From: Stylophora pistillata
Taxonomy: Eukaryota
DNA: 64,000 nt
Assembly (NCBI RefSeq): GCF_002571385.2
Contig: NW_019217851.1
Location: forward strand, 346,971 to 410,970
Direction: 5' to 3'
Shown here: positions 54,269 through 58,934 of the stretch, piece by piece
How the letters are laid out: each line of letters opens with the position of its first letter
How positions within the stretch are numbered: position 1 is the stretch's first letter
Program-made: the position numbers and the translations under genes
The notes under the pieces: model-generated
Told to the model about the DNA's origin: nothing
What the model saw: the letters and a program-made list of their open reading frames with translations, nothing else
Databases searched by the model: none

Positions 54269-56873
54269 GAGATTGTCAACTGCCAACTGCGAAACTGTGG
54301 GAACCTCGGTATCGCGGACGGACTGGGACCCAAAATAGCTCTTATCAAACATGTTTGGTCCTCATGTTGACGTTTTTAGATAAATACTTGATAATTTTTA
54401 AATTTAAGAGGGCGGATTACCAATCGATCTGTAACACAGAAACTATATTAAAAATAAAATGAAAAACAGTTTAAAAAAATCTGGGTGGGAGAGGGCATTC
54501 ACGAAGTTTGGAGGGACTACCAAAACCCTGACCCTGTTCAGTTAAAACAAAATCCGGTCAGATATTCCATCCTTGATGGGAATAATACACTTGTAAATTG
54601 GAGCATGCCAACCAAAACAAATAGATGGCAAAGCTGGCAGTACAAGAAGAGGCCCATGCCAATATTCAAGATATAACTGTGAAGTCCGATGACGGTGGTC
54701 GAGGTAAAAGTATAATAGTGCTCCAGTTTTCTCTCTCCGATTTCGTCGTTGACATCCGAAAAAATTATCCGAGAATTTTCAAACCTTTCCCGTGAGATAT
54801 TTTAACACAACCCACTCTGTAACATAGAGAGCTTAATGCCACACTTTTCGATATATATTTGTAACGTCCTGTGAGACTAATCATACTAGTGAATATAACG
54901 GAGACCGTACCGCAACCTGTCACAAGAAAAATGCTTCAATTTTTTTAAAGAACTTGTTCTCGGCCCAATCCCTTGAGTTCCCCCAAAAGGTGGATTCGGT
55001 GCTCAATCAACTTGCTTATGCGGCCGGCGATTTTAGTGCGAAAAACACAGGAATTTGACCCCTTGTTCAGAAATTTATTCCAAATCAGTCGAAAGTTAAA
55101 AGTTTTTTTAATTCTTCCTCCGAGATCCATATTAAAATAATCAGGATATCCTGGGATCCGGACGAACGTCTTTGTTAATCGTTGATTTTGTTTTGTTTGT
55201 GTTTTCATCAGCCAGTGGTCTTCTAAATGACCTGCAAATATCTGCCTCATTTCAAACACTCATCTGCTCATGCGTTATATTGTTTGGTTGAGATTTTCTC
55301 GTAAATGATAATCTCATCAAGTTAGAGGTTAATGGTGTCCCTGCACTTCTGCGAAAATGGCGGTTCCCTTCCCTAAACCATCGGAGACTATTTCCCGAAA
55401 ATTCTAATCAACATGAAAATCTGATCAACAAAAACTTTCAACGTGGTTATCGCAGGTTGTCAGTTTCTGGTCTTGTCAAATGACTGATCTGCTCTTCATT
55501 GACGAATAACCACAGCCTGCTCCTGGCTAATTGTTTCAGAAATACTGCGCATCTGTCGCATGGATGCACTGATGTCGAAGGACACGGATTCAAATTAGAA
55601 ATCACGGGAAGTTCAAGATATCTAGGTTTCCTAACAAACGACGCCACTTTAATATCATTTTCAATGAAATGAACTAACAGAATACTTCAAAGAAAACTGG
55701 AGTGATCCGCAAACCGGAATCTTCCTTTGTATTGTGCTAAATTTTGCCGTTTTCTCTGGTCCAGTACTCGATTTTCCTCTATGAAGAGGGAGCGCGGGCT
55801 CATTTCCCGAAGAGTGACTGGTAAACGAGCCTTCTGATTACCAGGCTTCAGTGACCGTTCAGTTTGGTGATTTCACGCCTGAACGCAGATGGAGTTAAGT
55901 GCTGAATATTTTATGACCTTTCTTCGAATTCAAAACAATCCCTTTTCATTTTGCCCGCGGAATGAAAGTAATCGTCTGCAAATCTTCCATCTTTCTGATG
56001 AAACTGTTTTCCCAAATGTTGAACATCGTTCAATTTTCTATTTAATCAAGTATCAGTTCTTTTGACCTTAGAAAACCTCACCGATTGGCTTTGCATGATT
56101 TGTCGATACCATTAAAATGACTGTGATAACCTGAGAGATGTGGTAAATAGTTGTTATCATCTTTTGAAACGAAATCCGAAAAATGATTGAGAATGATAAA
56201 GGATTAACCGGTTCTTGGCCCCCCTACTGACAAAACTTTGGGAAACTGAAAAATGTTCTTTATTTTATTAACTAGTCACTCTTACCTTTCCGTCATAATT
56301 CACGTTATCTCATCGGAGAAAACCGAAAAATGCAACACACTTCACTGAGTTCATGATTTTGGCGCTTAAAGGGCGGAATGCCCTGGAACCTTTTGCGTAA
56401 GAATTGACAGTGCTTCAGTCAGGCAAATCGATCCATCAACAAGATTCAATTGTTTGGCCAAAGATTAGTAAATTCTTGTTTGGCTACATAACTACTAAAA
56501 TTCACAGAAGGGAGTTCGATTTTCAAACTAGGTAACGTTTATATTTTGTTTTGTTGAGCAGGAAGTATATTTGAATCCTCATATTGTGAAGCTTTCTGCT
56601 GGACCGAGATCCGTTGCAGTCAGATGTGAGCAGCGCAAGTAAAGTAATCTCTCGGGGTGAAGTGACAGTTTCAAGAAATACGACATGCTGTGAATTGGAT
56701 TATCTGTTGACTCATATGATTGACTCTTGGACTGTTTTCCCCTCGAGTGAACTGAAATAATAACTAGAGGAGTTCTTGGAGAACTACTTAATACTCGATT
56801 CTTTAATATTTTGAATAGAGATATAATAGTTAAGTACGGAACAGATGTGTACTGACACGTTTTGACGAGAGAT

Positions 56874-58501
56874 ATGGATCAGGGGAAACAGGTCAAAACA
56901 GAAACTCTCCTCGACTCGCTTGTGCGGCAGTTGTCGGTGTATGCAGTCGCCGCCATGGGTTTATTTCTCATAGCAAAAGAATACTTCAGCGGTAAGTGCA
57001 CTTCGATGCCTTTCAACTTACCAAGTAGCTTGAAATCTGGTGTTTTCGTCAGATATATAATTATAGTATTCAGTTACCTTGCGAAGTTTACTTTTAGATT
57101 TTAGTCATACAGTCCTCGATTTTCTCGTAATGAAAAAGTATTTTATTCCGTCAGAGTTTATTATTTGTTATTCAAAAAACTTTTCTCGTGTAGATGGAAC
57201 CTTTCAATTAGTATTATTCCCATTAAACCCTTAACTCCTGGAAGTTATTAACCTGAACTTCTACCCATAAAATCCATAAATCACCCTGCAAACAGGTAAC
57301 GACAATACTCAAATTCATCAGGAATTTGTTGTCTTGATCCAACACTAGAGGAGCTAGAGGAGAGAATTAAAAATCAGATCTTGGGATTGTCTTGAGAACT
57401 TAAAAGAAAAAACATAATCGAACAGCATTTGTGAAATGTAGCGTTAATATCTTATTAGACAGAAAATTTTTTGATAAACATTGTTTGACATTGTTTCTTT
57501 CGGTTGAAGGTTCGCTCATTGTCTGCCAACCAATCAACAGGGGTGTTAAAACGAACCTGTCTTACAGCCAATCACAGGCAGACTACGATAAAGCTTACTG
57601 TTTGATGTCAATGATAGATTTCCGGGAAAACCTGATCATTGCATCAGGAAGTGAACCTAACACAATCCCTGGGGTCACCATAATGGGAATCAAGTCAGAG
57701 GAAGAAAAGATCATTTATCAGAATTATCTTCCATTTGCTTTAGTCATTCAAGCCGCTCTATGCTGCATTCCAATCATTTTATGGCACATTTGGGCTTCCG
57801 ATATTCTTCGTACCTGCATAAGATTTGTGGTTGATAGCTCAAGTAAAATTTTCCCCGGAGTGGTCGATTCAAGCCATTCCTCGGTCAAAAAAGACCAAAG
57901 TTTTGAATTACGCATGGAGTATCTGGGCGCTCAAGTTGAACTTTGGGAAGGACGGAAATTCCTTCTTAGAGTTTACACTACAAAGCTTATGCTAAGCCTT
58001 GGCATCTTCATCTTTATAGTGACCTTTTATGTAGCATATCCTCAACTGAATTATGCTAACTTCCAAGGGTATTTTGTTTGTCACGTGCACAAGCAAACTT
58101 TGGTTACGTGTGTGTTTCCTGATATTGACCTCTTCAAGTTGGCGTGGATTGTTAATATCGTTCTTGTCGACATATCTATTGTGATCGTAGTTCTCCAACT
58201 GTTAAACGTTGCGTTCTGTCTGCAACGAAAGAAAACGTTTTTTTCCTATTTCATGGGAATAGAAGAGAGAAAAATATCCCTAATACCAAACGATTTACAT
58301 TTGATCTCTCACTTTTGTTATGAAAACGCCGGAGTAATGTGTCCAAGTATGATGCACAGCTCTTTTAATCTCAGAAAGACAATGCAAACCCCACTTATTT
58401 CACTTGGAAGTTCGGAGGAAGAGCTGCACTCCCCGAACTCAAGTTCATCTCTTTCATATAGCACAGCACCTCAGCTTTTCAGACGACAAACTGCGGACTA
58501 A
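56874..58501 (+). CDS. Pannexin/innexin-family large-pore channel, pannexin-like, 2 exons (56874-56991, 57510-58501), about 369 aa
   Basis: ATG at 56874 with an in-frame stop upstream at 56853; phase-1 intron with GTAAGT donor and AG acceptor; 1,110 nt in total. Four hydrophobic segments. Extracellular Cys pairs in loop 1 (IVC...AYC) and loop 2 (FVC...VTC). TM2 signature YQNYLPFALVIQAALCCIPIILW (Pro kink, P-x3-W). C-terminal NDLHLISHFCYEN. Confidence 0.85.
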
Positions 58502-58934
58502 GAACTGAGGATTCTATATTTCCCTGAGTAGCAAACAAACAAATATGGTCTCAGACTACACCTTCACAAATATGGTCTCAGTCGTTTTAGGGGTTAATAA
58601 CAATAAATCACCGGTTTTACAACATAAACAGTAGCCTCTATGAGCAAAAAAAGTATTTCCCTTCTTCTGTAACAACCCCAAAACGTTCTCTCTTCTAGAG
58701 TTAGATTTTAAAAGAAGACTTATCGTAGTGAACATAATGTTTGAAAATTGGGAAATATCACTTGGGTGATATCTTCGGATACCCCCCAGTTTCAGCTGGA
58801 TGATATAGGGTCACATGATACGTTTAAACCAATCGTGCGCGAGTAATAAAATATTTGATAGATCATAAAGATAGTTATTGATTTGTCTTATGAAAAAGAA
58901 ATTAAAGATGTACCTATGCGTCAGATATTCAAGA

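What the first reader, a model, noticed from the sequence alone, without database searches (positions are those of the whole stretch)
56874..58501. Chordate-style pannexin in an apparently cnidarian (coral) genome
Seen: a 4-TM, 4-Cys large-pore channel. Compared with human PANX1 from memory, three motifs align without gaps: KTETLLDSLV vs RLELAVDKMV; SYSQSQADYDKAYC vs SFSWRQAAFVDSYC; NDLHLISHFCYEN vs NDLSLYNLFLEEN. The innexin hallmark YYQW is absent (IYQNY). Established: pannexins proper are regarded as chordate, and innexins are patchy in anthozoans (from memory, reported missing in several stony corals). Inference: this may be an overlooked pannexin-like lineage that predates the cnidarian-bilaterian split and could provide ATP-release or non-junctional signalling. 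Caveat: some cnidarian innexins are already known to look pannexin-like.
Basis: partly seen in the sequence, partly recalled or inferred. Interest (0 to 1): 0.85.

Follow-up and report, generated by a model that had tools for sequence, protein, structure and literature searches.

The report
Coral's single pannexin-like channel gene
This is a real, expressed Stylophora pistillata gene for a membrane channel that resembles vertebrate pannexins far more than insect-type innexins, but its sea-anemone and Pocillopora counterparts were already described that way, so it mainly corrects a published claim that this coral lacks such a gene.

Summary
Window 56874-56991 plus 57510-58501 (+ strand) is a two-exon gene encoding the 369-aa RefSeq protein LOC111325131 of Stylophora pistillata. 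PolyA RNA contigs confirm the splice. It passes the Pfam Innexin threshold weakly (42 bits, first half of the model), as vertebrate pannexins do (32-47 bits); arthropod innexins score about 400. An anthozoan family profile hits solved PANX2, PANX1 and PANX3 (1e-15, 5e-10, 3e-6) but C. elegans INX-6 only at 0.017. The predicted fold agrees: PANX2 Z 21.5, INX-6 Z 13.1. It is the only such locus found in this genome.

"Overlooked" does not hold. It is the orthologue of the single Nematostella "innexin" A7SWW1, already reported as pannexin-like in 2013-2016. The Pocillopora orthologue, with its extracellular glycosylation site, is in a 2022 data set.

New here:
- The gene exists in S. pistillata, contrary to a 2016 statement.
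- The anthozoan sequences form one clade, which argues against the proposed chordate-to-Nematostella transfer.
- The N-x-S site in extracellular loop 1 is present in every sequence covering it.

Most likely function, inferred only: a glycosylated, non-junctional large-pore channel. My tree lacks Hydra, ctenophore, nematode and mollusc innexins and does not resolve the deep branching.

The parts
56459..56873 (+). Probable 5' untranslated region; the transcript start is not determined
   Evidence: PolyA RNA contigs lie on 56459-56697, 56689-56839 and 56719-56991 (table 8). Contigs cannot show a start.
56874..56991 (+). Coding exon 1: residues 1-39 plus the first base of codon 40 (cytoplasmic N-terminus and TM1)
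   Evidence: ATG at 56874 and GTAAGT donor after 56991. Equals the N-terminus of P0001. RNA joint.
56992..57509 (+). Single intron, 518 nt, GT..AG, phase 1, between TM1 and the first extracellular cysteine
   Evidence: Joint 'skips 518, GT..AG' in contigs of X3, X6 and X7.
57352..57386 (.). Short dispersed repeat inside the intron; not part of the gene's function
   Evidence: RNA contigs of very high depth match only these 35 bases and run on into unlike sequence (tables 2, 7, 8).
57510..58501 (+). Coding exon 2: residues 40-369 and the TAA stop (EL1, TM2, cytoplasmic loop, TM3, EL2, TM4, C-terminal domain and tail)
   Evidence: Open frame. Pfam Innexin hit. 100% identical to P0001.
57524..57601 (+). 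EL1 core from Cys45 to Cys70, holding the N55-L-S57 sequon (57554-57562) and the SYSQSQADYDKAYC motif
   Evidence: C70 is invariant and C45 nearly so in 42 sequences. N55 and S57 are invariant in 16 anthozoan sequences. The sequon is in every anthozoan-type sequence that covers the site. Alignment to PANX1, PANX2 and PANX3.
57713..57784 (+). Pre-TM2 and TM2 motif IYQNYLPFALVIQAALCCIPIILW. It keeps Y-Q, P-F, Q-A, P127 and W131 but lacks the innexin YYQW
   Evidence: P127 and W131 are nearly invariant.
58079..58111 (+). EL2 beta-hairpin with Cys230 and Cys240
   Evidence: Both are invariant in 42 sequences. Strands 227-232 and 236-241 in the model.
58289..58327 (+). Post-TM4 cytoplasmic motif NDLHLISHFCYEN, shared with pannexins (PANX2 CDINILAMFCNEN)
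   Evidence: HMMER alignment to PANX2. MAFFT alignment. N312 is nearly invariant.
58391..58498 (+). Low-confidence, probably disordered C-terminal tail with the conserved PLISLGSSEEEL and SLSYxTAPQ motifs
   Evidence: pLDDT is under 50 for residues 331-351. L335, I336, S337 and T358 are invariant in 16 anthozoan sequences.
58502..58865 (+). 3' untranslated region; the end is approximate
   Evidence: RNA contigs run continuously from the coding sequence to 58858-58865 (table 8).

Best explanation
The locus is the only innexin/pannexin-superfamily gene found in Stylophora pistillata. It is the orthologue of Nematostella A7SWW1 and Pocillopora A0A3M6UTQ1. It encodes a 369-aa subunit with four transmembrane helices, two conserved cysteines in each extracellular loop, and a cytoplasmic C-terminal helical domain followed by a disordered, motif-bearing tail.

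By sequence and predicted fold it is of the pannexin type. The most likely mechanism is therefore as follows. Subunits assemble into a ring, heptameric if it follows the pannexins. The protein is N-glycosylated at the invariant N55-L-S site in extracellular loop 1. It then works as an undocked, large-pore plasma-membrane channel that lets ATP and other small molecules or ions out of the cell, and not as half of a gap junction. This fits the classical absence of gap junctions in anthozoans.

Shown here: gene structure, expression, family membership, pannexin-like sequence and fold, single copy, and conservation across anthozoan-type sequences. Inferred only: oligomeric state, glycosylation, cellular location and permeants.
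For: Gene and splice.

Family membership: Pfam PF00876 at 41.8 bits against a cut-off of 25.

Pannexin-type rather than canonical:
- The Pfam match covers only model positions 4-157, as in PANX1, PANX2 and PANX3 (32-47 bits). Arthropod innexins score 394-409 bits over the whole model.
- Profile against solved structures: PANX2 1.4e-15, PANX1 5e-10, PANX3 3e-6, INX-6 0.017, no LRRC8.
- Only 47 hits in 1.84 billion representatives. The nearest identified proteins outside the anthozoan-type set are amphioxus proteins and vertebrate pannexins.
- The ESM Atlas neighbours shown are all chordate pannexin clusters.
- AF2 model with pLDDT 84 and pTM 0.78. It matches PANX2 at Z 21.5, PANX1 at 19-20, LRRC8A at 15.7 and INX-6 at 13.1. 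The Foldseek top 50 holds only pannexins and LRRC8.

Single copy.

Orthology: one anthozoan clade with support 98/90 that contains Nematostella.

Sequon: N55 and S57 are invariant. In the alignment the site lies two columns from the N-F-T sequon of PANX2 and PANX3.

Literature: extracellular glycosylation prevents pannexin docking (PMC8769644, citing Ruan 2020). Anthozoans lack gap junctions (PMC3882753).
Against: No functional data exist for any anthozoan member. Welzel and Schuster (PMC8769644) list seven innexins with extracellular sequons that still form gap junctions, so a sequon alone does not exclude docking. PMC4685580 cites Popova et al. 2012, which I did not read, for a suggestion that the Nematostella gene may be involved in electrical coupling between embryo blastomeres.

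The residues aligned with the PANX1 pore constriction W74/R75 are Q60/S61, so selectivity and gating need not resemble PANX1. PANX2 and PANX3 also act in intracellular membranes, so a plasma-membrane location is not assured. The AF2 alignment contained pannexins, which may pull the model towards them.
Confidence: 0.65

Rival explanations
1. It is a gap-junction protein after all. The anthozoan singleton would dock between cells, for example in embryos, giving electrical or dye coupling despite the extracellular sequon.
For: PMC4685580 cites Popova et al. 2012 for a suggestion that the Nematostella gene may be involved in electrical coupling between blastomeres. Some sequon-bearing innexins form gap junctions (PMC8769644). 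The TM2 motif keeps innexin-like Y-Q, P-F and Q-A residues.
Against: Ultrastructural gap junctions are reported absent from anthozoans (PMC3882753). The sequon is invariant in every sequence covering it. Sequence and fold are clearly nearer to the non-junctional pannexins.
Confidence: 0.15
2. It is mainly an intracellular-membrane channel, for example an ER calcium-leak or Golgi channel as proposed for PANX3 and PANX2, and not a surface ATP-release channel.
For: The best sequence and fold matches are to PANX2. The FC-x-EN motif is shared with PANX2. That PANX2 and PANX3 have intracellular roles is from my general knowledge and was not checked here.
Against: Nothing in the sequence points to retention in an inner membrane. 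An invariant luminal or extracellular sequon is compatible with either location.
Confidence: 0.15
3. The anthozoan gene was acquired by horizontal transfer from a chordate. Abascal and Zardoya 2013 suggested this for Nematostella, as reported in PMC4685580.
For: It resembles chordate pannexins more than canonical innexins. [quoted passage not shown]
Against: The gene is present in Stylophora, Oculina, Pocillopora, Nematostella and many unnamed coral-type and anemone-type sequences that form one clade (98/90). The stony-coral sequences group apart from the Nematostella group within it. The clade is not nested inside vertebrates (100/97 monophyletic) or the main amphioxus group. Pannexin-like relatives also exist in a crinoid, a flatworm, an annelid, a scallop and a brachiopod. 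The gene has a spliceosomal intron and the G+C content of its surroundings.
Confidence: 0.04
4. The pannexin resemblance is only retained ancestral character in slowly evolving lineages, and the gene's true closest relatives are the hydrozoan innexins. In that case there is no separate 'pannexin-type' lineage.
For: Relations among the pannexin-like groups are unresolved (55/55). Anthozoans, amphioxus, Owenia and Lingula are regarded as slowly evolving lineages (general knowledge). The TM2 motif is intermediate between the innexin and pannexin forms. No hydrozoan innexin could be brought into my tree.
Against: None of the proteins I could name among the 47 hits at E<=0.001 was hydrozoan, while vertebrate pannexins did appear; several hits remained unnamed. 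The papers read here report that Nematostella stands apart from innexins (PMC3882753) and clusters with chordates (PMC4685580).
Confidence: 0.2

Closest known systems
Nematostella vectensis A7SWW1 ('Innexin', LOC5502737) and Pocillopora damicornis A0A3M6UTQ1
   Same: Orthologues. They share the anthozoan clade (98/90). P0033 is 36-37% identical over about 350 residues. The Pocillopora sequence printed in the PMC8769644 supplement has the same motifs, tail and EL1 sequon. All have the same EL1 N-L-S site, listed there as N62 and N57.
   Different: Only the species differs. For S. pistillata the literature states that no PANX/INX gene was detected (PMC4685580), which this locus contradicts. None of the three has been tested functionally.
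Vertebrate pannexins PANX1, PANX2 and PANX3 (solved heptameric channels such as 8gyq, 6vd7, 7xl6)
   Same: These are the best sequence-profile and fold matches. Shared features are the four-TM plan, two cysteines per loop, the EL1 motif S-x-S-x-x-Q-A-x-[YF]-x-D-x-Y-C, the TM2 P..LW motif and the post-TM4 ND..L....F..EN motif. An extracellular sequon lies in EL1 as in PANX2 and PANX3.
   Different: Identity is only 17-20%. The sequon sits two alignment columns upstream. Q60/S61 stand in place of PANX1 W74/R75. The protein is shorter, with an unrelated tail. Monophyly with chordate pannexins is unresolved. Oligomeric state and ATP permeation are untested.
Canonical innexins (arthropod Inx2 and Inx3; C. 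elegans INX-6, 5h1q)
   Same: Same Pfam family PF00876, same topology and same cysteine pattern. The Y-Q, P-F, Q-A and P...W residues of the TM2 motif are partly retained.
   Different: No YYQW. The Pfam score is 42 bits against about 400 bits, and only half the model is matched. INX-6 is hit at E=0.017 over 43 residues and at fold Z 13.1 against 21.5 for PANX2. A branch of about 2.3 substitutions per site separates it from the arthropod innexins.
LRRC8 (VRAC) pore domain
   Same: Related fold: LRRC8A Z 15.7, with Foldseek hits.
   Different: No sequence hit at E<=10 among solved chains. No PF12534 hit. No leucine-rich repeat domain; the protein ends at residue 369.
Anthozoan connexin-like (CxL) proteins (bioRxiv 10.64898/2026.06.13.731801)
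   Same: A four-TM large-pore-type channel family of the same genome. One member (L007) is weakly matched by the pannexin-like profile over TM3-EL2-TM4 (E=2.8e-6).
   Different: L007 is a Pfam Connexin (41 bits). The protein studied here has no Connexin hit. The preprint reports 4-100 CxL copies per coral genome against 0-1 innexins.

Membership tests
Innexin/pannexin superfamily (Pfam PF00876) | Profile match above the curated gathering score | tested here: met
   41.8 bits against a cut-off of 25 for the full protein; 36.1 bits for exon 2 alone.
Innexin/pannexin superfamily (Pfam PF00876) | Four transmembrane helices with both termini on the same (cytoplasmic) side | tested here: met
   AF2 model with pLDDT 84 has helices 12-39, 110-153, 190-215 and 245-279. 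It superposes on PANX2 over 296 residues. This is a prediction, not an experiment.
Innexin/pannexin superfamily (Pfam PF00876) | Two conserved cysteines in each extracellular loop | tested here: met
   C45 and C70 in EL1, C230 and C240 in EL2, invariant or nearly so in 42 sequences.
Canonical (gap-junction) innexins | YYQW motif at the start of TM2 | tested here: not met
   The sequence is IYQNY. 119 of 120 arthropod innexins have Y[YF]QW.
Canonical (gap-junction) innexins | Full-length, high-scoring match to the Innexin profile | tested here: not met
   Only model positions 4-157 of 333 are matched, at 42 bits, against 394-409 bits over positions 1-332 for arthropod innexins.
Canonical (gap-junction) innexins | Docking of two hemichannels into an intercellular channel | not testable with these tools
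   This needs paired-cell electrophysiology or a structure.
Pannexins (chordate PANX1-3) | Closer in sequence to PANX1-3 than to innexins | tested here: met
   PANX2 1.4e-15, PANX1 5e-10 and PANX3 3e-6 against INX-6 0.017. Ranking. ESM Atlas neighbours.
Pannexins (chordate PANX1-3) | Pannexin-type protomer fold, including the cytoplasmic C-terminal helices | tested here: met
   Z 21.5 (PANX2) and 19-20 (PANX1) against 13.1 (INX-6). Caveat: this is a predicted model and pannexins were in its alignment.
Pannexins (chordate PANX1-3) | Conserved N-glycosylation sequon in an extracellular loop | tested here: met
   N55-L-S57 is invariant and lies two columns from the PANX2 and PANX3 N-F-T site. Actual glycosylation was not tested.
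Pannexins (chordate PANX1-3) | Forms one clade with chordate pannexins, excluding other innexin-family groups | tested here: inconclusive
   The node joining vertebrate, amphioxus, crinoid and anthozoan groups has 55/55 support. Hydrozoan, ctenophore, nematode and mollusc innexins are missing from the tree.
Pannexins (chordate PANX1-3) | Heptameric assembly; ATP or large-solute permeation without docking | not tested
Function needs experiments.
Pannexins (chordate PANX1-3) | PANX1-type W74/R75 extracellular constriction | tested here: not met
   The aligned residues are Q60/S61. PANX2 and PANX3 also differ from PANX1 at this position.
LRRC8 / VRAC | Pannexin_like (PF12534) N-terminal domain plus a C-terminal leucine-rich repeat domain | tested here: not met
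   No PF12534 or LRR hit. No LRRC8 chain at E<=10. The protein is 369 aa long.
Connexins / anthozoan connexin-like proteins | Connexin (PF00029) profile match | tested here: not met
   No hit for P0001 at E<=0.01 or for the two exons at E<=1. By contrast L007 scores 41 bits.

The most novel reading that the evidence does not exclude
The anthozoan singleton, vertebrate PANX1-3, at least two amphioxus lineages, a crinoid protein and two lophotrochozoan groups (Owenia; Argopecten and Lingula) would be survivors of one ancient, glycosylated, non-junctional 'pannexin-type' subfamily. That subfamily would have separated from the gap-junction-forming canonical innexins before cnidarians and bilaterians diverged. 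Anthozoans would have kept only this type, which would explain at the gene level why they have no gap junctions while hydrozoans, with dozens of canonical innexins, do.
Probability: 0.3. Interest if true: 0.6.

Novelty: new member of a known kind. Interest (0 to 1): 0.3.

Why it matters
It corrects the record for a major coral model: PMC4685580 states that no PANX/INX gene was detected in Stylophora pistillata. It also shows that the pannexin-like "innexin" of Nematostella is a conserved anthozoan gene and not an oddity or a horizontally transferred gene.

If the inferred function holds, corals have exactly one pannexin-type large-pore channel. That makes it a clean target for studying ATP or purinergic signalling, wound and stress responses, or host-symbiont exchange in a phylum without gap junctions. 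It also bears on whether non-junctional signalling or cell-cell coupling was the ancestral role of the family.

The conceptual point, a pannexin-like protein in an anthozoan, has been in print since 2013-2016, so a specialist would be only mildly surprised.

Tried and rejected
1. The first AF2 run, with the 16-sequence anthozoan alignment, gave pLDDT 45. I discarded it and used the 42-sequence alignment instead.

2. I could not bring in hydrozoan, ctenophore, nematode or mollusc innexins.
- The one representative search returned only pannexin-like proteins plus two concatenated innexin models.
- A search seeded with a single-exon ostracod innexin (L002:26692-27699) listed only its best 120 hits, all arthropod.
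The tree therefore has arthropod innexins as its only canonical representatives.

3. The third word-index search, with alignment A3, added no named taxa.

4. The organisms behind P0034-37, P0042, P0049 and most of groups B and C could not be named. I call P0002-P0037 'anthozoan-type' because of their clade, not because of a record.

5. LRRC8 and connexin membership were rejected (see the membership table). Horizontal transfer from a chordate was rejected as unlikely. Pseudogene or mis-annotation was rejected: the frame is open, the RNA is spliced and the gene is conserved.

Searches used exon 2 by reference (window:57509-58498) and exon 1 by reference. The full-length protein was taken as database record P0001, which a search returned.

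7. No complex prediction was sent, because a heptamer exceeds its limits and a dimer would not have changed my odds. No AU test was run, because the nodes in question are already unsupported.

8. I met no N stretches and no human-like contigs.
Full report
**What is there**

The longest open frame in this part of the window is 57431-58501 on the + strand. Reading the DNA gives an ATG at 56874 and a GTAAGT donor after 56991. An AG acceptor precedes 57510, and a TAA stop lies at 58499-58501.

Exon 2, searched by reference, returned a 369-aa database protein, P0001. It is 100% identical over exon 2, and its first 39 residues equal the exon 1 translation. The source names it 'uncharacterized protein LOC111325131 [Stylophora pistillata]'.

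PolyA RNA-seq contigs from three runs carry a joint that skips exactly these 518 bases with GT..AG ends. Two of the runs give identical figures and may be one data set. The contigs also cover the coding sequence and about 360 bases of 3' UTR. The gene is real, spliced and expressed.

**Family**

Pfam gives Innexin (PF00876) at 41.8 bits against a cut-off of 25, matching only model positions 4-157 of 333. Vertebrate PANX1, PANX2 and PANX3 score 47, 42 and 32 bits in the same part of the model. Arthropod innexins score 394-409 bits over the whole model.

Across 42 relatives C70, C230 and C240 are invariant, and C45, P127, W131 and N312 nearly so. That gives two cysteines per extracellular loop and the TM2 proline. 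The innexin hallmark YYQW is replaced by IYQNY, while 119 of 120 arthropod innexins have Y[YF]QW. The neighbouring Y-Q, P-F and Q-A residues are kept, so this motif is intermediate between the innexin and pannexin forms.

**Pannexin-like or innexin-like?**

Four lines of evidence agree; they are not fully independent of one another.
- A profile of 16 anthozoan-type sequences was searched against all solved chains. It hits PANX2 at 1.4e-15, PANX1 at 5e-10 to 1e-5 and PANX3 at 3e-6, each over TM2 to the post-TM4 motif. C. elegans INX-6 is hit only at 0.017 over 43 residues, and LRRC8 not at all.
- The same profile against 1.84 billion representatives finds only 47 proteins at E<=0.001. After the anthozoan-type set come amphioxus proteins, an unnamed ENA protein (P0042), a Macrostomum 'innexin' and vertebrate PANX2. 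Further down come PANX3, PANX1, a crinoid protein and two lophotrochozoan groups (Owenia; Argopecten and Lingula). The only canonical innexins are two concatenated gene models, which score through repeated copies.
- The language-model neighbours shown are all chordate pannexin clusters at 0.91-0.95.
- An AF2 model from the 42-sequence alignment (pLDDT 84, pTM 0.78) superposes on PANX2 at Z 21.5 and on PANX1 at 19-20. LRRC8A gives 15.7, connexin-50 gives 14.2 and INX-6 gives 13.1. The Foldseek top 50 holds only pannexins and LRRC8. Caveat: pannexins were in the alignment, although no templates were used.

**Copy number and relatives**

Six-frame searches of the whole S. pistillata assembly were run with PF00876 and with the broad pannexin-like profile. 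They find this locus alone as a family member. The next hit is a connexin-like gene (see below).

The anthozoan-type sequences fall into about 30 clusters at 90% identity. Named members are Oculina patagonica and Nematostella vectensis.

A careful IQ-TREE analysis (50 rows, 363 columns, LG+C20 PMSF) gives these results:
- The anthozoan-type sequences form one clade with support 98/90. The stony-coral set (100/99) stands apart from the Nematostella group (100/98).
- Vertebrate pannexins are monophyletic (100/97).
- Arthropod innexins lie across a branch of about 2.3 substitutions per site (100/100).
- The order of the pannexin-like groups is unresolved (55/55 and 85/66).
- Hydrozoan, ctenophore, nematode and mollusc innexins could not be obtained. 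The tree therefore cannot say whether the pannexin-like assemblage is a clade or a grade.

**What was already known**

- The Nematostella orthologue P0033 is A7SWW1. Takaku et al. [quoted passage not shown] They noted that Abascal and Zardoya 2013 saw the same and suggested horizontal transfer from a chordate. They also wrote that no PANX/INX genes were detected in Aiptasia, A. digitifera and Stylophora pistillata (PMC4685580).
- The source data of Welzel and Schuster 2022 list A7SWW1 (EL1 site N62) and Pocillopora damicornis A0A3M6UTQ1 (371 aa, site N57). The printed Pocillopora sequence is plainly the orthologue of this gene (PMC8769644).
- A 2026 preprint counts 0-1 innexins per anthozoan genome.

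The added points are these. The gene does exist in S. pistillata. It is conserved across anthozoan-type sequences in a way that fits vertical descent and argues against the transfer hypothesis. Pannexin-like relatives also occur in several non-chordate bilaterians.

**Mechanism**

The sequon N55-L-S57 in extracellular loop 1 is invariant in the 16-sequence alignment. A sequon (N-L-S, N-I-S or, in one divergent member, N-T-S) is present in every anthozoan-type sequence that covers the site. In the alignment it lies two columns upstream of the N-F-T sequon of PANX2, PANX3 and several Owenia-group proteins.

Extracellular glycosylation keeps pannexins from docking (PMC8769644, citing Ruan 2020). 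Anthozoans are reported to lack gap junctions (PMC3882753). The best-supported reading is therefore a glycosylated, undocked, large-pore channel, ring-shaped like the pannexins, that releases ATP or other small solutes.

Several points limit this reading:
- The residues aligned with the PANX1 constriction W74/R75 are Q60/S61, so permeation and gating may differ.
- The tail (residues 331-369) is predicted to be disordered but carries conserved PLISLGSSEEEL and SLSY.TAPQ motifs. These suggest regulation or sorting, but I cannot say which.
- All of this is inference. Some sequon-bearing innexins do form junctions, and a role in coupling between Nematostella blastomeres has been suggested.

**Verdict**

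The finding is a sound annotation of a known kind of gene. It has modest corrective value and leaves an open, testable evolutionary question.

Noticed in passing
L007:1408-2358 (-) = G000:C440, about 117.7-118.6 kb: The broad pannexin-like profile A2 hits this 317-aa single-ORF protein at E=2.8e-6 over TM3-EL2-TM4. Pfam calls it Connexin (41 bits), so it is one of the anthozoan connexin-like proteins of the 2026 preprint. The precomputed Pfam list for anthozoan-type P0035 also carries both Innexin and Connexin. This may be a faint sequence bridge between the two supposedly unrelated families, or a shared compositional bias of four-TM proteins.
   Followed up: partly
L008 (G000:C666:144796-145137, -) and L009:1084-2019 (-): These are further weak hits of the same profile. 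L008 lies in a 1325-aa open frame (E=0.017), possibly a connexin-like domain fused to an NLR. L009 is a 312-aa four-TM-looking ORF with paired loop cysteines and no Pfam family above its cut-off.
   Followed up: no
window 57352-57386: A 35-base stretch inside the intron is matched by many RNA contigs of very high depth that continue into unrelated sequence. It is a short dispersed repeat carried by many transcripts.
   Followed up: no
P0041/P0077 versus P0043, P0046, P0050, P0054 (Branchiostoma): Amphioxus has at least two very divergent pannexin-like lineages, only about 25% identical. P0077 does not group with the main amphioxus cluster in the tree. PMC8769644 describes lancelets as having a single innexin.
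   Followed up: partly
P0072 (Anneissia japonica); P0069 and P0076 (Owenia); P0059 (Argopecten); P0070 (Lingula); P0045 (Macrostomum): A crinoid, an annelid, a scallop, a brachiopod and a flatworm each have proteins that match the anthozoan profile. Against Pfam Innexin they score from no hit up to 69 bits (canonical innexins score about 400). They are pannexin-like members, mostly unannotated, in animals generally described as having only innexins.
   Followed up: partly
L004:6001-7344 and L005:3001-4917 (ENA assembly ERZ25069853): Two intronless pannexin-like genes (P0042, 447 aa; P0049, 638 aa) come from one unnamed assembly. P0042 is sister to the anthozoan clade (95/90) and shares the YDKAYC motif but lacks the EL1 sequon at that place. 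The organism is unknown.
   Followed up: partly
window 58675-58821: RNA contigs in all four runs show a joint in the 3' UTR that skips 142-145 bases, without GT..AG ends and with only 22 letters on one side. It may be an allele-level deletion, a repeat collapse or an assembly artefact.
   Followed up: no
runs X6 and X7: The two runs, filed under different studies, give identical contig coordinates and depths. They look like one data set filed twice, so the splice is supported by two independent sources, not three.
   Followed up: no
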